This document shows positions 3,465 to 57,711 of a stretch of 64,000 bases of DNA, piece by piece. Location of the stretch: sequence record OQ790161.1. The stretch is one strand, 5' to 3'. How positions within the stretch are numbered: position 1 is the first letter of the stretch; each line of letters begins with the position of its first letter. The notes below the pieces were generated by a model. The model did not search any database. It was not told the DNA's origin and saw nothing but the letters and a program-made list of their open reading frames with translations. The position numbers and the translations under genes are program-made.

Positions 3465-3523
3465 CAAACAAACGGGACGGTCTTCGGGCCGTCCCATTTA
3501 TTCCATCGACCAAGGTAACAAAC

Positions 3524-4021
3524 ATGAAGTCCAATCCGTTCTCTTTCAGCTGGCGTGCGTTCGTGACCGCACTGACCGTGTTCGCAGTGATCATCCTGGC
3601 CACCCAGTCGCCTTCGGCGTATGCCAACGACAAGGTGATCGGTGAAGTCACCACCGGCACCCAGATCCTCGGCCCCAACCACACCGTGGGTGTGATCCGC
3701 TTCCAGGATCCCAAGATCCCCAACGCATGGTGCTATCTGGCCCGTGCCCAGACCGGCGGCTTTGCAGCCAACTTCGGTATGGCCGAGGATCCTTCCGAGT
3801 TCACCATCGACTGTTTCTCCAAGGGCGTACTGAAACTGCCCGCAGGCCTGCCGGCCAAGGAAGAAGTCTCGCGCACCAGCCGTTCGGCGGTGTTCAAGGA
3901 AATGATCGTCCAGCGCTTCGTGGATGCCGAAGCACAGCGTGTGGTGTATCTGGTCTACACCCGCCGCCTGTGGGACGGTTCGCCGAAGAATGCGATGTCC
4001 TCGATCCCCTACGAGCCCTGA
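3524..4021 (+). CDS. creA: CreA-family exported protein
   Basis: Signal peptide then IGEV..., FQDP..., CYLARAQTGG, AEDPSEFTIDC, LVYTRRLWDGSPKNAMS; collinear with E. coli CreA motifs (CYVSRAKTGG, GSPKNAIS). Confidence 0.88.
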   Translation: MKSNPFSFSWRAFVTALTVFAVIILATQSPSAYANDKVIGEVTTGTQILGPNHTVGVIRFQDPKIPNAWCYLARAQTGGFAANFGMAEDPSEFTIDCFSKGVLKLPAGLPAKEEVSRTSRSAVFKEMIVQRFVDAEAQRVVYLVYTRRLWDGSPKNAMSSIPYEP

Positions 4022-4023
4022 TC

Positions 4024-4425
4024 ATGGCCAAGTCTCAGTACCTGCACGCCGGGCACAATCCCAATCCACTCCTGCCGCCCATGAAGTACCGGCAGATGGG
4101 TTACTCGCACTGGGTGGAGCGCATCGACTACGACGGCCGCTCCTGCGGTCTAGAGGTCTACCAGTGGCAGGCCCACGCTGGGAAGTGGTGTCGTCCCAAT
4201 GAGTACGCCAGTGGCCGGGATCTGGACTTGGTGAACTACCGTTGGGTGGCCCTGTGTCCTAACCCGCCTTTCAAAGAAGAAGTCGAGGAAGTCCAGCAGA
4301 TCATCCAGCGCCTGCGCCTGTCGTTTGCTGAAGACACCCCCGACACCCCCGGTCTGTTGACCCGTGAGGAGTTCGACAAGATCTCCTTGATGTTCGCCGA
4401 GAATATCGTCCCCAGGAGTACGTGA
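4024..4425 (+). CDS. Hypothetical protein
   Basis: ATG 2 nt after creA stop. Confidence 0.7.
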   Translation: MAKSQYLHAGHNPNPLLPPMKYRQMGYSHWVERIDYDGRSCGLEVYQWQAHAGKWCRPNEYASGRDLDLVNYRWVALCPNPPFKEEVEEVQQIIQRLRLSFAEDTPDTPGLLTREEFDKISLMFAENIVPRST

Positions 4426-5083: not shown

Positions 5084-5332
5084 ATGAAGAGTTGGCGCAT
5101 TGTACAGTTCTGCGTTCAACTTGGACGCTTCACCCGTGCCTTGTGGAACGGTAAGCTGGTGATGAACGAACGCGGGGAAATCCACGCAGTCAACGTCACC
5201 GTTGGAGAGATCGCATCGTCTTCGGGCAACATCTCCCATCTGCCCATCCGCAAGTTCAAGCTCAAGGGCGGCAAACGATCACCGGAAGTGGCGGAATTGG
5301 TAGTCGCAGCAGATTCAAAATCTGCCGGGTAA
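5084..5332 (+). CDS. Hypothetical protein; 3' end overlaps tRNA-Leu
   Basis: AAGG RBS, 2 nt after upstream stop. Confidence 0.5.
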   Translation: MKSWRIVQFCVQLGRFTRALWNGKLVMNERGEIHAVNVTVGEIASSSGNISHLPIRKFKLKGGKRSPEVAELVVAADSKSAG

Positions 5333-5366
5333 CACCGTGAGGGTTCGAGTCCCTCTTTCCGGACCA
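5282..5366 (+). tRNA. tRNA-Leu(CAA)
   Basis: ccggaag/tttccgg acceptor, gcaga-tt-CAA-aa-tctgc, long variable arm, T-arm, CCA. Confidence 0.95.
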
Positions 5367-11615: not shown

Positions 11616-11706
11616 GGATCGATGGCAGAGTCTGGCTTATCGCACCTGTCTCGAAAACAGGAGTGGGGGAAACCCACCGTAGGTTCAAATCCTACTCGGT
11701 CCGCCA
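11616..11706 (+). tRNA. tRNA-Ser(CGA)
   Basis: cctgt-ct-CGA-aa-acagg, long variable arm, CCA. Confidence 0.95.
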
Positions 11707-11711
11707 CATGA

Positions 11712-11828
11712 AACCCTCTAAAGCATCGCAACGCATCGGCACGTGAAACCGATCGTATACTCCGCGCGCCGCTCCCTCGGAGCACCGCCGGGAGGTGTAG
11801 ATGGTCGACCACTACGGTCGATGGGGTT
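11712..11828 (+). ncRNA. Structured spacer RNA between tRNA-Ser and tRNA-Gln
   Basis: aaccc/gggtt closure with atcgg/ccgat, gctcc/ggagc, cacc/ggtg, tcgacc/ggtcga hairpins. Confidence 0.45.
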
Positions 11829-11840
11829 AACCTTTTACGA

Positions 11841-11918
11841 TGGGGGAGTCGTCTAGCGGCCAAGGACCCCAGGTTTTGATCCTGGTATTCGTAGGTTCGA
11901 ATCCTACCTCCTCAGCCA
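11841..11918 (+). tRNA. tRNA-Gln(TTG)
   Basis: ccagg-tt-TTG-at-cctgg, CCA. Confidence 0.93.
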
Positions 11919-11971
11919 CACACAAGGGACCTTCGGGTCCCGCAGCGCCTAGCGCTTAGTTTTTTGTTTCA

Positions 11972-12047
11972 GGGTCGGTAGCTCAATTGGCAGAGCGGCG
12001 AGCTCCAAATTCGTCGGTTGTGGGTTCAAGTCCTTCCCGGCCCGCCA
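11972..12047 (+). tRNA. tRNA-Trp(CCA)
   Basis: gcgag-ct-CCA-aa-ttcgt, gggtcgg/ccggccc, CCA. Confidence 0.92.
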
Positions 12048-12069
12048 TAGTTACAACAACAGTTTCACT

Positions 12070-12159
12070 GGGTTGGTAGTTCGTTAACGGTAGGCGAGCC
12101 AGACTGTAAATCTGGAGCCCATAGTGGCCTTATAGGTTCGATTCCTTTACAACCCACCA
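12070..12159 (+). tRNA. tRNA-Tyr(GTA)
   Basis: ccaga-ct-GTA-aa-tctgg, long variable arm, CCA. Confidence 0.92.
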
Positions 12160-12168
12160 CGTTTCAAC

Positions 12169-12244
12169 ACAGCGTTCGTCTAGCGGTTTAGGATAACGGC
12201 CTTTCACGTCGTCAACACGGGTTCGAATCCCGTACGCTGTACCA
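12169..12244 (+). tRNA. tRNA-Glu(TTC)
   Basis: acggc-ct-TTC-ac-gtcgt, acagcgt/acgctgt, CCA. Confidence 0.95.
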
Positions 12245-12266
12245 CATTCACAAGGCTCGTTACGAC

Positions 12267-12512
12267 ATGACACGTAAAAAGTTCAAAGACCTCGAGAAGA
12301 TGGTCGATCACATTCTGGCTGATCCCAGAATGCAGAACGAAGCAGTCATGATCAACGGCGCGCCTATCAACACCGATTATCTCAAGGAATGCTTGACCGC
12401 TTTCCGTCGCATTGAAATGCGACTGATTTTGGGTGAGTCCGTTTCTCCGCTAGAACGATTGGCGGTTGAACTGATCATGCAGACATTCGGCGTTGAGTTT
12501 CAACCAAAGTAA
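12267..12512 (+). CDS. Hypothetical protein within tRNA cluster
   Basis: ORF fills the spacer between tRNA-Glu and tRNA-Ile. Confidence 0.7.
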   Translation: MTRKKFKDLEKMVDHILADPRMQNEAVMINGAPINTDYLKECLTAFRRIEMRLILGESVSPLERLAVELIMQTFGVEFQPK

Positions 12513-12515
12513 CAC

Positions 12516-12591
12516 TGTGGATTAGCTCAGTTGGTAGAGCGTTCCCCTGATAAGGGAAAGGTCGATGGTTCGAGTCCATTATCCGCAACCA
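12516..12591 (+). tRNA. tRNA-Ile(GAT)
   Basis: ttccc-ct-GAT-aa-gggaa, CCA. Confidence 0.95.
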
Positions 12592-12598
12592 GTTTCAA

Positions 12599-12688
12599 GG
12601 GCATGTGTGTGAGCGGTTTATACAAGCGGGTTGCTAACTCGCCGACCCTTAAAAAGGTCCGTAGGTTCGAATCCTACCGTGCCCGCCA
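12599..12688 (+). tRNA. tRNA-Ser(GCT)
   Basis: gcggg-tt-GCT-aa-ctcgc, long variable arm, CCA. Confidence 0.95.
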
Positions 12689-12890
12689 TCTTCGTGGAGA
12701 TCCAGGTATCGAGGCCTGGCAGGGGCTCCCATCGGGGGTAGTGCCTGTAGCGACAATAGAGAGCACCGCGATCCCCCGCACTTTCGTAGAGCTGCAAGGC
12801 TTCGGCCGGACTCTACGTCTTTGCGGGTTTAAAATGTAGGACAGTATCTTCCAGACAGCAGTAAGCTGATTCACCCGTCTGGAGATAACC

Positions 12891-13124
12891 ATGTTTGACT
12901 ATACGAAGTACTGTCCTGTTTGTGATTCACTCGACACTTGGGTTCCCTTCGGTCCCGAGGACCTGACCCTCACGTGCGGGTCGTTCTCTGAAACGATGAA
13001 GGCCGTGTACGGCTCCATCTGTACTAACTGTGGTGATCGTCGCCTGAGCGATGAAGACCATGAACGGTATGCGCAGATGGGTGACCGAGTGGTCCTCAAG
13101 TGGCAAGCCTCAAACGCGTCTTAG
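12891..13124 (+). CDS. Stand-alone YgiT/MqsA-type zinc-finger domain protein
   Basis: YCPVCD...(~33 aa)...ICTNCGD followed by a helix, the layout of the MqsA N-terminal domain; no HTH; GGAG RBS. Confidence 0.65.
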   Translation: MFDYTKYCPVCDSLDTWVPFGPEDLTLTCGSFSETMKAVYGSICTNCGDRRLSDEDHERYAQMGDRVVLKWQASNAS

Positions 13125-13190
13125 CTCAGTTGGCAGAGCAGGAGAATCATAATCTCTTTGTCCGGGGTTCGAATCCCTGAGACGCGACCA
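13115..13190 (+). tRNA. tRNA-Met/Ile2(CAT), non-initiator
   Basis: ggaga-at-CAT-aa-tctct, paired C1-G72, CCA. Confidence 0.9.
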
Positions 13191-13192
13191 AA

Positions 13193-13333
13193 ACAAGAAC
13201 CACAACTGCGGTCATCGGTCCGCAGCCCGCATAGGCCTCGGTGGGGTGGAAAATCTGAAGTACTGTCATCCGGTACTTTGGTGTCCGGCAAGCCACCCAC
13301 GCAAGTGGGACTGTCGGCCACTGTGGTTCTTGT
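13193..13333 (+). ncRNA. Candidate structured ncRNA C (~141 nt)
   Basis: Perfect 12-bp terminal stem acaagaaccaca/tgtggttcttgt; ctgcgg/ccgcag, aagtac/gtactt, cccac-GCAA-gtggg hairpins. Confidence 0.55.
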
Positions 13334-13490
13334 CTGTCCCTGAGTCAAGGCAGGTAGTCCTTGGACGGAAGCATGCTCCGCATTACCTAGAGCGAAAGGG
13401 TAGACGTTAAACCGCTGGAGGCGAACCAAGCCGACCGGGGATACGCATGTAAGTGTGGGTTGGTAGTGACCGCCTTCGGGCGGTTGCGTT
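13334..13490 (+). ncRNA. Structured element E ending in a UUCG hairpin
   Basis: tcaagg/ccttgg, gcatgc-tcc/gga-tac-gcatgt, ttacc/ggtag, accgcc-ttcg-ggcggt. Confidence 0.4.
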
Positions 13491-13502
13491 TAGTGTACTA
13501 AG

Positions 13503-13580
13503 GGTTGTCCGTAGCTCAGCTGGTAAGAGCGCCGCACTGTGAATGCGGAGGTCATGGGTTCAAACCCCATCGGGCACCCC
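13503..13580 (+). tRNA. tRNA-His(GTG), CCA not encoded
   Basis: ccgca-ct-GTG-aa-tgcgg; G-1:C73 pattern; ends CCT. Confidence 0.88.
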
Positions 13581-13600
13581 TTAGTGCATTATCAGTTTCA

Positions 13601-13690
13601 GGGTCAGTGGGTGAGAGGCTTAAACCAGCGAGTTGGAAGCTCGCCGCGCCCTGCGGGGCGCCGTAGGTTCGAATCCTACCTAATCCGCCA
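13601..13690 (+). tRNA. tRNA-Ser(GGA)
   Basis: gcgag-tt-GGA-ag-ctcgc, long variable arm, CCA. Confidence 0.93.
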
Positions 13691-13698
13691 GTTTCAAT

Positions 13699-13837
13699 GG
13701 CGTTGCTAGCTCAGTTGGTAGAGCGCTCGTATATATGGGGTTCAACTCCCCACTTGCCCACCGTGCGAAAGCACGTCTGGGCGAGCACTGGTTAAAAAGA
13801 CGAGAGGTCGTGGGTTCGAATCCCACAATACGCCCCA
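13699..13837 (+). ncRNA. tRNA-like RNA with 69-nt anticodon loop (insert or intron)
   Basis: D-arm gctc-agttggta-gagc, stem ctcgt/acgag, variable AGGTC, T-arm gtggg-ttcgaat-cccac, CCA. Confidence 0.65.
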
Positions 13838-13848
13838 ATGTTTCTATA

Positions 13849-13917
13849 GCGAATGTAGCTCAGTTTGGGAGAGCACCTGTCTCTTTGTGTCGCGGGTTCG
13901 AGTCCCGCCGTGCTGCC
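13849..13917 (+). pseudogene. Degenerate tRNA shell (anticodon arm shortened)
   Basis: Intact D-arm and T-arm, only 17 nt between them, poor acceptor stem. Confidence 0.6.
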
Positions 13918-13923
13918 TGTGTG

Positions 13924-13998
13924 CTGCACGTAGCTCAGCTGGTAGAGCAAAAGACAACTAACAGGGGGTCACAGGTTCGATTCCTGTCCTTCGCGCCA
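13924..13998 (+). pseudogene. Degenerate tRNA shell (unpaired anticodon arm)
   Basis: Intact D-arm, T-arm acagg-ttcgatt-cctgt and CCA; anticodon and acceptor stems do not pair. Confidence 0.6.
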
Positions 13999-14007
13999 AG
14001 TTTCAAA

Positions 14008-14084
14008 GCGTGTGTAACTCAGTCTGGTAGAGTCGCAGCCTTCCACGCTGTTGGTCACGAGTTCGAATCTCGTCGCACGCTCCA
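14008..14084 (+). tRNA. tRNA-Gly(TCC)
   Basis: gcagc-ct-TCC-ac-gctgt, gcgtgtg/cgcacgc, CCA. Confidence 0.95.
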
Positions 14085-14112
14085 ATTAGTAGATCCGTGA
14101 AACGCATTTGCC

Positions 14113-14188
14113 GGTCAGATGGCAGAGTGGTAATGCACCGGATTGCAAATCCGCGTACTCGCTGGTTCGAACCCAGCTCTGACCTCCA
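14113..14188 (+). tRNA. tRNA-Cys(GCA)
   Basis: cgga-tt-GCA-aa-tccg, ggtcaga/tctgacc, U73, CCA. Confidence 0.95.
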
Positions 14189-14210
14189 CCACCTCACACA
14201 GGACTTCGCC

Positions 14211-14405
14211 ATGTCGCGTCATCAGCGCTACTATGATGGACTGAATCAGCTGACCACGGAACAAGGTCTGACCACGCGCGTTGCTAACGACGTGCTCTAC
14301 TTCCGCCAGCAAGCCAACTGGAGTCAAGGGTTGGAAGACCAGTTCATCGAACAGGCTCGCGATGGTGAGGTTCCTGACATCACCCAGATCGGACGTTCGA
14401 CATGA
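14211..14405 (+). CDS. Hypothetical protein
   Basis: AGGA RBS, ATG 14211. Confidence 0.7.
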   Translation: MSRHQRYYDGLNQLTTEQGLTTRVANDVLYFRQQANWSQGLEDQFIEQARDGEVPDITQIGRST

Positions 14406-14728
14406 CCCAGAAAGTCAAGTACACCTTCACCGCAGTCACCGCCCGTCCCAATCCGGTCATTGGGATTCCCGAAGGTCTCGAGCTCACCCGTGAGCAGTTC
14501 TTCGAAGCGCTGGCCAATGCCCGCGTGACCCGGCTGTACCTGGACAGCAACACCTTCGCTCAGGTCAACTACGGGTTCGTCAAGAAGGACAACACGCTGG
14601 TGGCTGACCTGCTGCCGCACTTCCCCGATGTCTCGATCACGTTGCTGGCCAACGGCGAGGCGATCATGGAAGTGTCCAAGGATTCGCAGTACCAGCCTAA
14701 CGCCTTCGCCATCGACGTCGAGCTGTAA
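14402..14728 (+). CDS. Hypothetical protein
   Basis: ATGA overlap with upstream gene. Confidence 0.75.
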   Translation: MTQKVKYTFTAVTARPNPVIGIPEGLELTREQFFEALANARVTRLYLDSNTFAQVNYGFVKKDNTLVADLLPHFPDVSITLLANGEAIMEVSKDSQYQPNAFAIDVEL

Positions 14729-14738
14729 CGGTTGTTGC

Positions 14739-14833
14739 CCCTACCGACAGGTAGGGAACTTCCTTGGCGCCCAGGGGTACGGAGAGTTTGCCTATCATCT
14801 CGCCGTAACGACGTCAAGGCAGGTTGGGATAGG
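14739..14833 (+). ncRNA. Structured element upstream of tRNA-Asn (possible pseudoknot)
   Basis: ccctacc/ggtaggg, ccttgg/ccaggg, tacgg/ccgta hairpins; loop cctatc complementary to gatagg. Confidence 0.4.
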
Positions 14834-14845
14834 TTTCAGTTTTGA

Positions 14846-14921
14846 GGTTCATTAGCTCAGTCGGTAGAGCATGGCACTGTTAATGCCAGGGTCGTAGGTT
14901 CGAATCCTACATGAACCGCCA
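14846..14921 (+). tRNA. tRNA-Asn(GTT)
   Basis: tggca-ct-GTT-aa-tgcca, ggttcat/atgaacc, CCA. Confidence 0.96.
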
Positions 14922-35261: not shown

Positions 35262-36134
35262 ATGGACCAGAACACCAAGAAGATCTACGACGTGCGCCTG
35301 AACGAACAGGACCGCATGACCATCATCGGTACCAGCCCCAACGTCGCCGGCCAGGCCGTGTTCTTCGACCTCACCGGCAAGAATGAGCCGTCGACCAATG
35401 GCGAGCGTCGTGTCTACGGCACGCTCAACGAGCACGATACCGGCTTCGATGATCGTGCCTTCCTCTCCAAGCTCGTGGAGTTTGCGGTGAGTCATTTCGC
35501 CCCGAACTACCCCGATGACGCGAACAAGTCCTACTTCACCGGCAGCAAATACAACTTCGATTTTGCCAAGCCGTTGGACTGGACTGAACTGTCCCAGTGG
35601 GCCGATTTCTTTGACGTCGAACTGACCAACGTTCCCACGGTCGATGTCGAGCGCATGACGCGCAAGTACGACACTGGCCGTGCGTTCCAGTTTGAGTTCA
35701 TGTCCGGCGACAACGGCGACTACCTGCACTTGGACGGGACCAGCTTGGAAACCCTGAACATGCAGGTCGAGCTGAAGTACGCCGTGAAGGATGATGCCAT
35801 CTACTTCTACAAGATCTTCGACAACAAGGCCAAATCCGTCGGTCCCCGTTTGATTCCGCTGTCGTGGGTGCTGATGGGGATGGTGGTTGCCCATGTCACC
35901 AAAGACGAAGGGGAGCAGACCCGCCTGGTGGTTGTGGATGAAAGCCTGATCTCTGGTGATATGGATCCGGGTCAGCTGGTGCGGCTGCTGGGCATCAGCG
36001 AATACTACCCGCAGTCCGGTATCCCCGAGGAAGGGAACTACGTCATCGATCCGCGACTCATCGAGCTGGGCAATGAAGCCCTGCGCAAGCTGGAGTTCAA
36101 GCTCTCCCCGGTGAAAGTCGAACCGACGGCATAA
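35262..36134 (+). CDS. Hypothetical protein
   Basis: GGAG RBS; strong C-ending codon bias. Confidence 0.85.
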   Translation: MDQNTKKIYDVRLNEQDRMTIIGTSPNVAGQAVFFDLTGKNEPSTNGERRVYGTLNEHDTGFDDRAFLSKLVEFAVSHFAPNYPDDANKSYFTGSKYNFDFAKPLDWTELSQWADFFDVELTNVPTVDVERMTRKYDTGRAFQFEFMSGDNGDYLHLDGTSLETLNMQVELKYAVKDDAIYFYKIFDNKAKSVGPRLIPLSWVLMGMVVAHVTKDEGEQTRLVVVDESLISGDMDPGQLVRLLGISEYYPQSGIPEEGNYVIDPRLIELGNEALRKLEFKLSPVKVEPTA

Positions 36135-36140
36135 AAGCAA

Positions 36141-36164
36141 GAGGGCTCCCTTCGGGGAGCCCTC
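36141..36164. terminator. Bidirectional UUCG hairpin
   Basis: gagggctccc-ttcg-gggagccctc between convergent genes. Confidence 0.75.
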
Positions 36165-36187
36165 TCACGGCATCCTTTTGTTTTTGG

Positions 36188-36421
36188 TCACCGCGAGCGC
36201 CGGCGAGTCGGCTTGCTCTGCAGATGCGCCAACGGGTAGTCCGACAGGAACCGCTCAGCAGCGGGCTTGTCTTGGAACCGGCCCAGTACTACGCCAGTCT
36301 TTTCCTTGATGAGACGACACGGCAGTTCGCTACCTGCAGCATTTTCGAACGTGACCAGTTTAAGCTTCTTCCTGTACTCTTGTGCCCTGTCGGAGGCGGT
36401 TGGTGCGACTACTGTCGACAT
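36188..36421 (-). CDS. Hypothetical protein
   Basis: 77-aa ORF converging on terminator. Confidence 0.6.
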   Translation of the reverse strand: MSTVVAPTASDRAQEYRKKLKLVTFENAAGSELPCRLIKEKTGVVLGRFQDKPAAERFLSDYPLAHLQSKPTRRRSR

Positions 36422-36524
36422 TGTAGGGGTCCCCTGGATTGCGTGGTTGCGGTTTTGTATGAAGTGGTGGTTCCTCTCGGGACCATAGAATTACGTATTT
36501 TTTTACATGCAGATGTGATGATGT

Positions 36525-37235
36525 GGTGAAAGCCGGTCAGTACAGCTCATCGCATAGCGAAGACCCGAAGCCCGACTCAAACCTGCGTGCTAGATCCGCC
36601 ACCTCTCGAAGGCGTTTCTCCAAAGCAACACTTCGTCACTGTTCTCGCGTCGAAAGATACGAGACTTCCAACCTTGGGATCGAAGCACGCCTTATTGAAT
36701 GTCTGGAGTTACCAGTCTGGCCTTGGAGCCCGCATGACTGCTGATTCCTTACTAAGCACTCCCGGCAACTTACGGTGACGGGGTTAAAGTGCGCGTTGAG
36801 TTGTGAGCCCCTGCGAAGGCTTCCACAACTCTTAACCGTGCGGCTGGATCTCGCAGACCAGCAAGTTGTACGCGCTCAGTAAGCCTCACGAATCGCTTAG
36901 CTCAATAGGGCGAGCTTTCGACGGTGCACAGTCCATCCTACGAGTGGAAAACCCCAGGGGCTTCGGCCGCGGGGACTCACGAGAGTCGGTCGATACCCGA
37001 TGATGGATTGGTAACGCACTGGTAGATGAAGTGAGTGAAAGCTTTAGGGCAGTACGTGTGCAGCCTTCAGTGGTTTCTTTCGTCGGAAGAGCTCCCGACC
37101 ATTGAGACTACTGTGGGAAGTACATGGGTAGGAAAGGGGTGTAAGAGCCAGGCCTGGGCGGCCTGGCTCTTATGCCGTCGAGTGCGTAAAAGGAAACACC
37201 CCATCCACAGTCTATGTATTGAACTGCCTTTCAAG
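36525..37235. ncRNA. Candidate large (~700 nt) multi-domain structured RNA
   Basis: No credible ORF; at least 15 nested helices with GNRA/UUCG loops (see findings). Confidence 0.6.
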
Positions 37236-37269
37236 CCCGTACTATCCACTCGTGCCCAAGGAGTCAGCA

Positions 37270-37524
37270 ATGACCCAGCAAGATGAACCCAAGGTCAATC
37301 CGGTTGAGGCTTACAAGCATCACATCCATCTGATGTTGCGTGCCCGCTTCAACAAGGACTTCCGCGAAGAAGATCAACAGCTGGCCGCGATGGACCACTA
37401 TTACCTCCAGTGCGATGAAGTCGGTCGCAACCTGACCAAGGAATACGTGGCCACCGTCATCAAGCCGTACACCAAGATCAACGGCGTCCCCACCGAACTA
37501 CCGCCCCTGTATACCCCGACATAA
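37270..37524 (+). CDS. Hypothetical protein
   Basis: AAGGAG RBS before ATG 37270. Confidence 0.75.
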   Translation: MTQQDEPKVNPVEAYKHHIHLMLRARFNKDFREEDQQLAAMDHYYLQCDEVGRNLTKEYVATVIKPYTKINGVPTELPPLYTPT

Positions 37525-37535
37525 CGGAAAGTCCA

Positions 37536-38075
37536 ATGACCGACGAAGCCAAGATCACTGTTCCCTACGACCAGTTCCACATCACCTCGTTCCTGTACTG
37601 GATCGAGTCCAACGGCTACAAGCCCCATCTGGTTGTACTCACCGGGTATCCGGGTGTGCGTCTGCCGCCGGCGTCGATGTCCAAGGAAATGGAAGTGATC
37701 AACGCCCACAGCGATGCCGTGCACAAGATGCAATGGCACGATGATCGCGTGGAGTTCAACGCACGCTTCGGCGGTAAGGACCACCGGCTGGTCATTCCCT
37801 ATCGCGCGATCCGGGCCGTCACCTTCGCCCACACCTCCACCGGCGTAGCCATGCCGTGGGCCAATGATCCGCTGCCGACGCCGACCAGTGTACTGGACCC
37901 GGTCTTCGAGCAGGTCGGTCAGGCACTGGTAGGTGAGCCGCCCCAAGCCGAGGCGGTTGCCGAACCGGAAGTGGTTGCCGAAGACGCCGTGCCGAACAAG
38001 GACGCTGAAACCGAAGCGCCCAAGTCCAACGTGCGCACCGTGGACTTCCGTGCTCCGCGCAAGCCCAAGAGCTAA
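37536..38075 (+). CDS. sspB: ClpXP adaptor SspB (stringent starvation protein B)
   Basis: YWIESNGYKPHLVV...VINAHSDAV...VEFNARFGG...IPYRAI...TG.AMPW, acidic/Pro tail. Confidence 0.88.
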   Translation: MTDEAKITVPYDQFHITSFLYWIESNGYKPHLVVLTGYPGVRLPPASMSKEMEVINAHSDAVHKMQWHDDRVEFNARFGGKDHRLVIPYRAIRAVTFAHTSTGVAMPWANDPLPTPTSVLDPVFEQVGQALVGEPPQAEAVAEPEVVAEDAVPNKDAETEAPKSNVRTVDFRAPRKPKS

Positions 38076-41022: not shown

Positions 41023-41104
41023 GTGCTTTTTTCTTTGGGATATAGACGGAATTCAAACCCATACTATCGCATTGATAGGTACTCACACCAAACAAGGAAA
41101 GTCA

Positions 41105-57618: not shown

Positions 57619-57711
57619 TCGTTTCTTATTTTTCTGCCCTATTCCTTAGAAGCAAAACTGGGTCAAACCCATACTATCGAGATGAGCTTAATCCGAACCG
57701 AAGGAACCCCT

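What the first reader, a model, noticed from the sequence alone, without database searches (positions are those of the whole stretch)
36525..37235. Candidate ~700-nt multi-domain structured RNA upstream of the 37270/sspB operon
About 700 nt between divergent genes carries no credible ORF but is almost fully pairable into nested helices. Domain 1 helices: cttcg/cgaag (36631/36681) enclosing tctcgcgtc-GAAA-gatacgaga; ctgg/ccag; cagtc/gactg; gcact/agtgc enclosing cccg/cggg; gagttgtg/cacaactc enclosing cct-GCGA-agg; gctgg/ccagc; gtgc..tccatc/gatgga..gcac enclosing gagt/actc, cccc/gggg and ggc-UUCG-gcc. Domain 2 (37036-37233): tgaaag/ctttca, ggcagt/actgcc, actgtgg/ccacagt, ggggtgt/acacccc and a 12-bp aagagccaggcc/ggcctggctctt hairpin. 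Size and GNRA-rich architecture put it in the class of large phage ncRNAs such as ROOL or GOLLD (established classes), but I cannot match it to one. It has no T-arm/CCA, so it is not a tmRNA, and it lacks RNase P CR-I/CR-V motifs. A P7-like GAGACTA/CAGTCT pair (near 37104/37208) hints weakly at a group I-derived fold. Inference: a novel large phage ncRNA or ribozyme.
Basis: partly seen in the sequence, partly recalled or inferred. Interest (0 to 1): 0.85.

Follow-up and report, generated by a model that had tools for sequence, protein, structure and literature searches.

The report
New large structured jumbo-phage RNA
The gene-free gap upstream of the phage's sspB gene encodes a large, intricately folded non-coding RNA that is conserved, with many compensating base-pair changes, in about a dozen related giant phages and matches no catalogued RNA family, so it looks like a new class of large phage RNA whose job is still unknown.

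Summary
The window is Xanthomonas jumbo phage RTH11. The gap between a 77-aa gene on the minus strand and the sspB operon is non-coding, and its conservation is that of an RNA. I found the same element in the same gene order in about 11 lineages: phage LucasX and metagenomic contigs of 180-325 kb.

Covariation is strong. In the 3' domain 95.5% of cells are paired and 13 of 44 pairs have compensatory changes. In the central domain 24 of 37 pairs do. A loop-loop kissing interaction switches from CUGCGA/UCGCAG to CUACAA/UUGUAG. G-U pairs far outnumber A-C, so the RNA is read from the + strand.

Rfam 15 and ARAGORN give no match: it is not ROOL, GOLLD, RNase P, tmRNA or a group I or II intron.

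The conserved unit is about 36510-37181, roughly 670 nt. The shared core is about 390 nt, and the 5' and middle domains vary between lineages. A conserved box lies upstream. A recurring phage promoter box lies between the RNA and sspB, so the RNA is probably its own transcription unit.

The outer domain-2 helices and the group-I hint do not. Function is unknown. My best guess is a trans-acting architectural RNA or RNP, like GOLLD or ROOL.

The parts
36188..36421 (-). Divergent 77-aa basic protein gene, always next to the RNA. Candidate RNA-binding partner (inferred).
   Evidence: A homolog is present in every lineage, including L085 and L093. The AF2 model has pLDDT 81 and an alpha-beta-beta-beta-alpha topology with a KPTRRRSR tail. 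Foldseek gives only weak hits, to a HicB-like protein and to dsRBDs (E 0.4-3). No Pfam or PHROG family matches.
36493..36508 (+). Conserved upstream box ACGTATTTTTTTACAT. Putative promoter of the RNA (inferred).
   Evidence: CGTATTTTTNWACA occurs once per locus in 10 loci, always just 5' of the RNA. It is unique in the 64-kb window. L085 has the variant ACGTA-A7-TAC.
36510..37181 (+). The structured non-coding RNA as a whole, about 670 nt. The 5' end is inferred from the box and the 3' end from the loss of conservation.
   Evidence: Conservation boundaries. nhmmer hits in all syntenic loci. z-scores. Strand from G-U against A-C counts, 46:1 and 47:15.
36515..36530 (+). 5' block GTGATGATGTGGTGAA, identical in 8 of the 12 aligned sequences. 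Its pairing partner is unresolved.
   Evidence: Alignments. The duplex scan gave no consistent partner.
36531..36742 (+). Variable 5' domain. It contains a long-range helix GCGTGC (36585-90) with GCACGC (36685-90), hairpin P3 CGCC/GGCG (36597-36614) with loop ACCTCTCGAA, a GNRA hairpin (36643-36664), and CAGTC/GACTG (36713-17 with 36736-40). It is short or absent in L093/L091 and L102.
   Evidence: The helices keep pairing with changed sequence: GCGUGU/ACACGC in L101 and L108, GGUGCAC/GUGCACC in LucasX, and a different hairpin stem with a GCAA loop in L111 and L012 (sequences; read by eye, not scored formally).
36743..36755 (+). Conserved pyrimidine-rich joiner GATTCCTTACTAA, 5' of H1. Candidate partner of GGAAAGGGG in a nested long-range helix (inferred).
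   Evidence: Complementarity: ACUCCUU with AAGGGGU (7 bp), and UCCUUUCU with GGAAAGGG (8 bp) in L108 and L105.
36756..36792 (+). H1: GCACT/AGTGC plus CCCG/CGGG, with the near-invariant loop ACTTACGGTG.
   Evidence: CM alignment A7: 6 of 8 pairs show changes on both sides, for example GCGCC/GGCGC in L085.
36798..36831 (+). H2: GAGTTGTG+AGCC with GGCT+CACAACTC, loop CCTGCGAA.
   Evidence: 11 of 12 pairs have compensatory changes.
36811..36856 (+). Kissing interaction between the H2 loop CTGCGA (36811-16) and the H3 loop TCGCAG (36851-56).
   Evidence: L102 has CUACAA/UUGUAG, a double compensatory switch. 3 of 6 pairs have changes on both sides and 84.6% of cells are paired. Whether the contact is intra- or intermolecular cannot be told.
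36837..36872 (+). H3: inner GCTGG/CCAGC (36843-47 with 36858-62), plus a possible base helix CGTGCG/TGTACG. Flanked by the invariant AACCGT and GAAGTTGT.
   Evidence: Inner helix: 98.4% paired, 4 of 5 pairs compensatory. Base helix: 84.6% paired, no compensatory change.
36873..37052 (+). Variable middle domain, 70-190 nt across lineages. In RTH11 it holds a small three-way junction (GCTC 36874-77 with GAGC 36912-15) and a long hairpin GGTGC..CAGTCCATC / GATGGATTG..GCACT (36923-37020) carrying a 49-nt lineage-specific insertion.
   Evidence: RNAalifold on three sequences found compensatory pairs. Per-lineage folds. 49-nt indel against L111 and L101.
37053..37130 (+). H4: long bent helix. TAC/GTA, TGTGC/GTACA, an AG/AA internal loop, CCT..TCAGTGGTTTC / GAGACTACTGT..GGG, and tip GTCGG/CCGAC. 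ACGTGTGCAGCCT is invariant in all lineages.
   Evidence: In alignment A4 the long helix has 19 pairs, 6 of them compensatory. The tip helix is 100% paired.
37131..37139 (+). Purine strand GGAAAGGGG, invariant in all lineages except L108/L105 (one change) and L102 (absent). It is single-stranded in the nested model.
   Evidence: Candidate partners.
37138..37181 (+). H5: 17-bp terminal hairpin GGTGTAAGAGCCAGGCC / GGCCTGGCTCTTATGCC, then the tail GTCGA. No U-tract follows.
   Evidence: 100% of cells paired, 5 of 17 pairs compensatory, for example GAGAGGAGGC/GCCUCCUCUC in L091 and L093. The terminator scan found nothing here.
37230..37247 (+). Phage promoter-like box TTCAAGCCCGTACTATCC, between the RNA and the sspB operon. 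Not part of the RNA.
   Evidence: The same box, tcaaaCCCATACTATCG, lies 25-35 nt upstream of an RBS and ATG at 41061 and 57671. An equivalent box follows the RNA in the other lineages.
37270..38075 (+). Downstream operon: an 84-aa ORF (37270-37524) and the SspB-like adaptor gene (37536-38075).
   Evidence: Pfam SspB 9e-15 and phrog_8945. The gene order is conserved in all loci.

Best explanation
Shown: window 36510-37181 (+ strand) encodes a member of a previously uncatalogued family of large structured non-coding RNAs. The family is confined, as far as the databases show, to a clade of roughly 180-325-kb jumbo phages: Xanthomonas phages RTH11 and LucasX plus about 9 metagenomic lineages.

All members share a core of about 390 nt. 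It consists of three consecutive hairpins H1-H3, with the H2 and H3 loops forming a covarying 6-bp kissing interaction, then a variable linker domain, a long bent helix H4 with an invariant internal loop, an invariant purine strand GGAAAGGGG, and a 17-bp terminal hairpin H5. The RTH11 lineage adds about 240 nt of 5' domain and a larger middle domain.

Inferred (about 0.7): the RNA is its own transcription unit. It is driven from the conserved ACGTATTTTTTTACAT box. It is separated from the sspB operon by that operon's own promoter box.

Inferred (about 0.3-0.4 for each element): it acts in trans as a compactly folded architectural RNA, in the manner of GOLLD and ROOL. It may self-associate through its loop-loop contacts. 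It may form an RNP with the adjacent 77-aa basic protein, whose predicted fold resembles a dsRBD. Its biochemical role during infection is not known. A link to tRNA or translation is suggested only by its position at the end of a tRNA array in one lineage.
For: Homologs in the same gene order (77-aa gene on the - strand, then the RNA, then sspB) in every locus fetched.

In LucasX, DNA similarity is confined to the intergenic region.

Covariation:
- 3' domain: 44 pairs, 95.5% paired, 13 compensatory, 0 of 500 shuffles as good, slid controls 40-49% paired.
- Central domain plus kissing loop: 37 pairs, 85.5% paired, 24 compensatory, 0 of 500 shuffles, slid controls 34-46%.
- RNAalifold on only three sequences: 36 of 164 pairs compensatory.

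G-U against A-C counts are 46:1 and 47:15, which fixes the strand.

There is no coding signal.

MFE z-scores are -4.2 to -6.1 in three lineages.

No Rfam family matches at the gathering score or at E<=10, in the window or in five homologous loci. No tmRNA is found.

The upstream box occurs once per locus. The downstream box recurs at other gene starts.

In L093 the RNA directly follows a five-tRNA array.

77-aa protein model.

GOLLD and ROOL properties, from 10.1101/2024.12.08.627333: phage-encoded, near tRNA islands, a conserved 3' region with a variable 5' region, and covarying kissing loops that turned out to be intermolecular.
Against: There are no expression data, so the transcript ends are inferred only from conservation.

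No canonical terminator follows H5, so read-through into the sspB operon cannot be excluded.

The upstream box is not shown to be a promoter, and it is absent in the L091/L093 and L102 lineages.

Central-domain counts were made on an alignment fitted to the model, which leans towards the structure.

Only about 11 lineages are available. Some are close relatives, so the shuffle controls overstate significance.

The topology of the 5' domain and the partner of GGAAAGGGG are unresolved.

The dsRBD-like call for the 77-aa protein is weak (E>=0.4, TM about 0.44). Its adjacency may simply reflect inherited gene order.
Confidence: 0.72

Rival explanations
1. The element is a very long cis-acting 5' leader of the sspB operon. 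It would act as a riboswitch-like, thermosensing or protein-binding leader that controls transcription or translation of the downstream genes.
For: It is always on the same strand as sspB and upstream of it. No terminator with a U-tract follows H5. In L093 and L102 sspB follows within about 100 nt.
Against: A promoter-like box that recurs at other gene starts lies between the RNA and the operon in all lineages. The genes immediately downstream differ: 0-2 unrelated small ORFs, and a DUF7448 protein in L012. No conserved pairing reaches an RBS. Conservation stops 20-60 nt before the box. A size of 390-680 nt and this tertiary complexity exceed known leaders.
Confidence: 0.12
2. It is a highly diverged member of a known large RNA class: RNase P RNA, tmRNA, a group I or II intron, ROOL or GOLLD.
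For: Its size, a phage rich in tRNA genes (14 in the window), its position after a tRNA array in L093, and an SspB neighbour that is suggestive of tmRNA. There are short motif resemblances to RNase P conserved regions (AGGAAAG, GGUGAAAG), recalled from memory and only a lead.
Against: cmscan against all 4227 Rfam 15 families gives nothing at the gathering score or at E<=10, on six lineages including the minimal 390-nt forms. ARAGORN finds no tmRNA. There is no T-arm or CCA end. The RNase-P-like strings are not conserved across lineages (GUAAGAGC only in RTH11; GGUGAA followed by A, G or U). The element is not inserted in any gene, so it is not an intron.
Confidence: 0.05
3. It is a DNA-level element, such as a replication origin, packaging site or regulatory region with inverted repeats, or it is decayed coding sequence, and not a functional RNA.
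For: It is a large gene-free region between divergent genes, with many inverted repeats. The - strand also folds somewhat better than shuffles (z -2.2 to -3.2).
Against: Pairing tolerates G-U but not A-C (46:1 and 47:15), which is an RNA signature on the + strand. Compensatory changes preserve hairpins of differing sequence. A loop-loop interaction covaries. There is no codon periodicity and no conserved ORF.
Confidence: 0.04

Closest known systems
GOLLD RNA (Rfam RF01998)
   Same: Phage-encoded, very large (hundreds of nt), function unknown, and often next to tRNA genes. It has a universally conserved 3' part and a less conserved 5' part. It has covarying loop-loop contacts (10.1101/2024.12.08.627333). 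Here the core lies in the 3' two-thirds, the 5' domain is variable, the H2-H3 kissing loop covaries, and the RNA follows a tRNA array in L093.
   Different: There is no detectable sequence or structure similarity (no cmscan hit even at E<=10). The hosts differ: Xanthomonas-type jumbo phages rather than Lactobacillales or lake phages. The core is smaller, about 390 nt. Oligomerisation has not been tested.
ROOL RNA (Rfam RF03087)
   Same: A large, ornate RNA of phages and prophages, found near tRNA islands, with multiple pseudoknots, no known protein partner and no known function. Its covariation-supported 'tertiary' pairs proved to be intermolecular bridges of a nanocage.
   Different: No match to the ROOL model. 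The helix layout is different. Here a small basic protein gene is constantly adjacent.
OLE RNA / OLE RNP
   Same: A structured RNA of about 600 nt with highly conserved single-stranded stretches. It works as an RNP with small dedicated proteins and forms a dimer via kissing loops (abstracts listed).
   Different: OLE is a cellular RNA of Bacillota extremophiles, with a different structure and membrane-associated partners. No similarity was found by Rfam.
Bacterial RNase P RNA / tmRNA
   Same: A core of similar size (350-400 nt). The genomic setting is related to tRNA, or to SspB, which is the adaptor for the tag that tmRNA adds.
   Different: None of the defining elements was found: no model match, no P4-type conserved regions shared across lineages, no tRNA-like domain, no tag reading frame.

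Membership tests
ROOL (RF03087) | Match to the family covariance model (sequence plus consensus structure) | tested here: not met
   No hit at the gathering score in the window. No hit at E<=10 in 36100-37600 or at E<=5 in five homologous loci.
GOLLD (RF01998) | Match to the family covariance model, with its conserved 3' multistem region | tested here: not met
   Same scans, no hit.
GOLLD/ROOL-like large phage RNAs (as a kind, not a homologous family) | Phage-encoded, over 350 nt, multi-helix structure supported by covariation, non-coding | tested here: met
   Phage origin.
GOLLD/ROOL-like large phage RNAs (as a kind) | Adjacent to tRNA genes | tested here: inconclusive
   In L093 the RNA lies directly after a five-tRNA array, and in L091 it is near a tRNA. 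In RTH11 the tRNA cluster is about 22 kb away. None is adjacent in the other loci.
GOLLD/ROOL-like large phage RNAs (as a kind) | RNA-only homo-oligomeric assembly (nanocage) | not testable with these tools
   Needs native gels, SEC-MALS or cryo-EM. The covarying kissing loop is compatible with either an intra- or an intermolecular contact.
tmRNA | tRNA-like domain (acceptor stem, T-arm, CCA) and a tag reading frame | tested here: not met
   ARAGORN reports tRNAs only. No tmRNA-clan hit in Rfam.
Bacterial RNase P RNA | Model match, and a conserved P4 with CR-I/CR-V | tested here: not met
   No Rfam hit. The strings that resemble RNase P are not conserved across lineages.
Group I / group II introns | Model match, insertion within a host gene with exon flanks, and a P7 G-binding site or domain V | tested here: not met
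   No Rfam hit. The element lies between divergent genes. The proposed P7 strands pair inside H4 with covariation. H5 lacks the domain V bulge, and its AGC is not conserved (AGA in L091 and L093).
cis-regulatory leader / riboswitch | Continuous with the regulated mRNA, with an expression platform (a terminator or an RBS-sequestering helix) | tested here: not met
   A promoter-like box lies between the RNA and the operon. No terminator follows. Conservation ends before the RBS. The transcript map itself has not been tested.

The most novel reading that the evidence does not exclude
The RNA is the founding member of a new functional class. It would be either a catalytic RNA or a self-assembling or protein-bound RNA machine specific to a clade of jumbo phages, working with the adjacent dsRBD-like protein. 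It would act on the translation, tRNA or proteolysis axis, for example by binding ribosomes through its invariant Shine-Dalgarno-like GGAAAGGGG strand or by handling phage tRNAs, rather than being a functional analogue of GOLLD or ROOL.
Probability: 0.2. Interest if true: 0.9.

Novelty: new variant of a known kind. Interest (0 to 1): 0.74.

Why it matters
Very few large natural RNAs (over 350 nt) with complex tertiary structure are known, and each one found has opened new biology: the ribosome, RNase P, introns, tmRNA, and more recently the OLE, ROOL and GOLLD assemblies.

This element adds an unrelated family that has two cultivable phage-host pairs, RTH11 and LucasX on Xanthomonas. That makes it directly testable by genetics, RNA-seq, chemical probing and cryo-EM.

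Its minimal 390-nt forms and its lineage-specific expansions give a natural deletion series. The covarying kissing loop offers an immediate mutate-and-rescue experiment.

It also shows that annotated 'empty' gaps in jumbo phage genomes can hide conserved RNA genes.

Tried and rejected
- **Rfam.** I ran the gathering threshold on the whole window and permissive E-value scans on the region and on five homologous loci. Only tRNAs and chance hits came back.
- **ARAGORN for tmRNA.** None found.
- **sigma-70 promoter and intrinsic terminator scan.** Nothing in the gap.
- **Single 15-16-mer scans of IMG/VR.** These gave mostly chance hits. A loose three-block pattern gave only chance hits.
- **The one genome-contig scan.** It gave a single chance hit in Gordonia.
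- **The search for related loci with SspB in IMG/VR.** It found nothing.
- **mafft-qinsi.** It is not usable on the machine, so structure-aware alignment relied on a covariance model.
- **Ralstonia jumbo phages with SspB-like genes.** I checked FLC4-3B and it lacks the RNA; its 'gap' holds an unannotated ORF. FLC1-1B was not checked.
- **Partner search for the invariant 5' block.** No consistent partner was found.
- **Partner search for GGAAAGGGG.** There are two candidates, the P3 loop and the pyrimidine joiner 5' of H1, and I could not decide between them.
- **H1 loop pairing with AACCGU.** This competes with the H3 base helix. Each is compatible with 11 of 13 sequences, so it is undecided.
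- **RNase P idea from motif resemblance.** Rejected, because the motifs are not conserved.
- **Mini-ORF GUG-AUG-AUG-UGG-UGA in the 5' block.** Rejected: there is no SD, and the stop codon is lost in L109.
- **Structure searches for the 77-aa protein.** Only weak or uncharacterised matches.
- **Literature searches.** No description of this RNA was found.

Full report
**Source and setting.** The window is Xanthomonas phage RTH11 (OQ790161.1, 312 kb; window 36100 = record 98100). The finding lies in an unannotated gap. On one side is a 77-aa ORF on the minus strand (36188-36421). On the other is an 84-aa ORF (37270-37524) followed by an SspB-family gene (37536-38075; Pfam SspB 9e-15, phrog_8945).

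As RNA, the + strand of 36525-37235 folds to -279.5 kcal/mol, z = -6.1 against 20 dinucleotide shuffles. The - strand gives z = -3.2. With my own shuffles, the revised unit 36510-37181 gives z = -4.7 (+) and -2.2 (-). The short homologs L093 and L102 give -4.2 and -5.6. There is no coding signal. Substitutions against three relatives fall evenly on the three codon positions, most indels are 1-2 nt, and the longest ORFs differ between lineages.

**Relatives.**
- blastn against 50,697 phage records finds only RTH11 itself and Xanthomonas phage LucasX. In LucasX, similarity is confined to the equivalent unannotated gap.
- Pattern scans built from invariant blocks found IMG/VR contigs of 311 and 324 kb (L012, L093) and metagenome contigs L084, L085, L090 and L091.
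- Going through SspB homologs and the contigs that encode them gave L101 (315 kb), L102-104 (183 kb, the same phage as IMG/VR contig L097, 203 kb), L105-107, L108, L109 and L111/112.
- Every one of these has the same layout: a 77-80-aa gene on the minus strand, a 600-800-nt gene-free gap, 0-2 small ORFs, sspB, and a gene of about 130 aa on the minus strand. An HMM of the 3' domain hits each gap (E 1e-9 to 1e-44).
- That gives about 11 lineages.
- I checked one of the two Ralstonia jumbo phages with SspB-like genes, FLC4-3B. It lacks the element.

**Boundaries.**
- Conservation starts at a box ACGTATTTTTNTACAY (RTH11 36493-36508). The box occurs once per locus and once in the window.
- It is followed by GTGATGATGTGGTGAA (36515-36530).
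- Conservation ends at TATGCYGTCGA (RTH11 37171-37181).
- About 20-60 nt further on lies tcaaRCCCrTACTATCs (RTH11 37230-37247). In this window the same box also sits 25-35 nt upstream of an RBS and ATG at 41061 and 57671. I read it as the phage promoter of the sspB operon.
- The RNA is therefore most likely a separate unit of about 670 nt in RTH11.
- Measured from the upstream box, RNA lengths run from about 390 nt (L093/L091, L102) through about 570-600 nt (L105, L108, L109, L085) to about 620-680 nt (L111, L101, LucasX, L012, RTH11).
- In L093 the RNA starts right after a five-tRNA array instead of the box.

**Structure of the 3' domain.** This rests on alignment A4.
- Helix H4 consists of TAC/GTA, UGUGC/GUACA, an invariant AG/AA internal loop, and then a stem of about 14 bp with a GUCGG/CCGAC tip.
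- The 17-bp hairpin H5 follows.
- Together they give 44 pairs, with 95.5% of cells paired and 13 pairs carrying changes on both sides. None of 500 shuffles does as well, and slid controls pair at 40-49%.

**Structure of the central domain.** I aligned this with a covariance model, so the counts lean somewhat towards the model.
- It holds H1 (GCACU/AGUGC plus CCCG/CGGG, loop ACUUACGGUG), H2 (12 bp) and H3.
- With the H2-loop/H3-loop interaction included there are 37 pairs, 85.5% paired and 24 with compensatory changes. None of 500 shuffles does as well, and slid controls pair at 34-46%.
- The loop-loop pairing CUGCGA/UCGCAG becomes CUACAA/UUGUAG in L102.
- G-U cells outnumber A-C cells 46:1 and 47:15, so the selected molecule is the + strand RNA.

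**Structure of the variable domains.**
- Between H3 and H4 lies a variable domain of 70-190 nt.
That hairpin covaries with L111 and L101, but its inner branch is a 49-nt insertion.
- In the 5' domain several helices keep pairing with changed sequence, by inspection of the aligned sequences. They are the long-range helix GCGUGC/GCACGC, the hairpin that presents a pyrimidine loop, the GNRA hairpin and CAGUC/GACUG.
- The overall topology of the 5' domain is not settled.
- The invariant purine strand GGAAAGGGG has two possible pyrimidine partners.

- Confirmed: the H1, H2 and H3 helices, the long hairpin of the middle domain, the GAAA hairpin, cagtc/gactg and the terminal hairpin.
- Rejected: the four closing helices of 'domain 2' and the P7-like pair.
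- The 3' arms of the rejected helices lie outside the conserved RNA. One arm is part of the promoter box. The 5' arms are used in the covarying H4.

**What is it not?** All 4227 Rfam 15 models were run on the window at the gathering score. Permissive scans were run on the region and on five other lineages, including the minimal forms. Only tRNAs were returned. ARAGORN finds 14 tRNAs and no tmRNA. The element is not inside a gene, so it is not an intron. Strings that resemble RNase P motifs are not conserved. Literature searches found no description of it.

**What might it do?**
- *Shown:* it is a conserved, complex fold with tertiary pairing and invariant single-stranded blocks. That is the hallmark of RNAs that act through their shape.
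- *Inferred:* it is transcribed on its own and acts in trans.
- *Closest analogues:* GOLLD and ROOL. They are phage-encoded, large and often beside tRNA genes. GOLLD has a conserved 3' part and a variable 5' part. In both, covarying kissing loops proved to be bridges between subunits of RNA-only cages. Homology to them was tested and not found, so the relation is one of kind, not of family.
- *A possible RNP:* the constantly adjacent 77-aa protein is basic. Its model (pLDDT 81) has the alpha-beta-beta-beta-alpha order of dsRBD and HicA/HicB-type folds. The structural matches are weak, and the adjacency may be inherited gene order.
- *The SspB neighbour:* this is intriguing because SspB is the adaptor for the tag that tmRNA adds, but nothing in the RNA resembles tmRNA.

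**Verdict.** This is a real, apparently undescribed family of large structured phage RNA. The function remains open.

Noticed in passing
window 5282-5366 and 11616-14921: There are fourteen phage tRNA genes: one tRNA-Leu at 5282 and a dense cluster of 13 at 11.6-14.9 kb, about 22 kb upstream of the RNA.
   Followed up: partly
window 37230-37247, 41052-41069, 57662-57679 (also 55057, 62258 on the minus strand): A recurring box tcaaaCCCATACTATCG lies 25-35 nt upstream of an RBS and ATG. It is probably a phage-specific promoter consensus. Equivalent boxes follow the RNA in all related loci.
   Followed up: partly
window 36137-36168: A perfect 14-bp GC-rich hairpin with T- and A-runs on either side lies between the convergent genes 35262-36134 (+) and 36188-36421 (-). 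It looks like a bidirectional terminator.
   Followed up: no
L093 3488-4822: In the 324-kb IMG/VR phage, an HNH-endonuclease-like ORF (3488-4186), five tRNA genes and a small ORF are inserted between the 77-aa-family gene and the RNA. In L091 a small ORF with a twin-arginine-like N-terminus lies between a tRNA and the RNA.
   Followed up: partly
L113 (Ralstonia phage FLC4-3B) 2394-3026: The 770-nt 'unannotated gap' upstream of this phage's SspB-like operon contains an intact ORF of about 210 aa that the record does not annotate. It does not contain the RNA.
   Followed up: partly
window 37536-38075 and homologs P0002-P0013: SspB-family adaptor genes are conserved in this jumbo-phage clade. More distant ones occur in Ralstonia jumbo phages and in Pseudomonas phage pf16. 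A phage-encoded ClpXP adaptor is itself little studied.
   Followed up: partly
window 36515-36529: The invariant 5' block reads GUG-AUG-AUG-UGG-UGA, a three- or four-codon mini-ORF. It has no Shine-Dalgarno sequence and the stop codon is lost in L109, so it is probably coincidental.
   Followed up: yes
window 36837-36842 / 36867-36872 and 37056-37061 / 37120-37125: Two similar conserved strand pairs, CGUGCG...UGUACG and CGUGUGC...GUACAUG, could in principle swap partners and form alternative conformations. Covariation cannot decide this because all four strands are nearly invariant.
   Followed up: no
window 36597-36614 and 36743-36755 against 37131-37140: The RNA carries anti-Shine-Dalgarno-like pyrimidine blocks (CACCUCU, CUCCUUA) and a Shine-Dalgarno-like purine block (AGGAAAGGGG). 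These may pair with each other, or conceivably with ribosomal or messenger RNA.
   Followed up: partly
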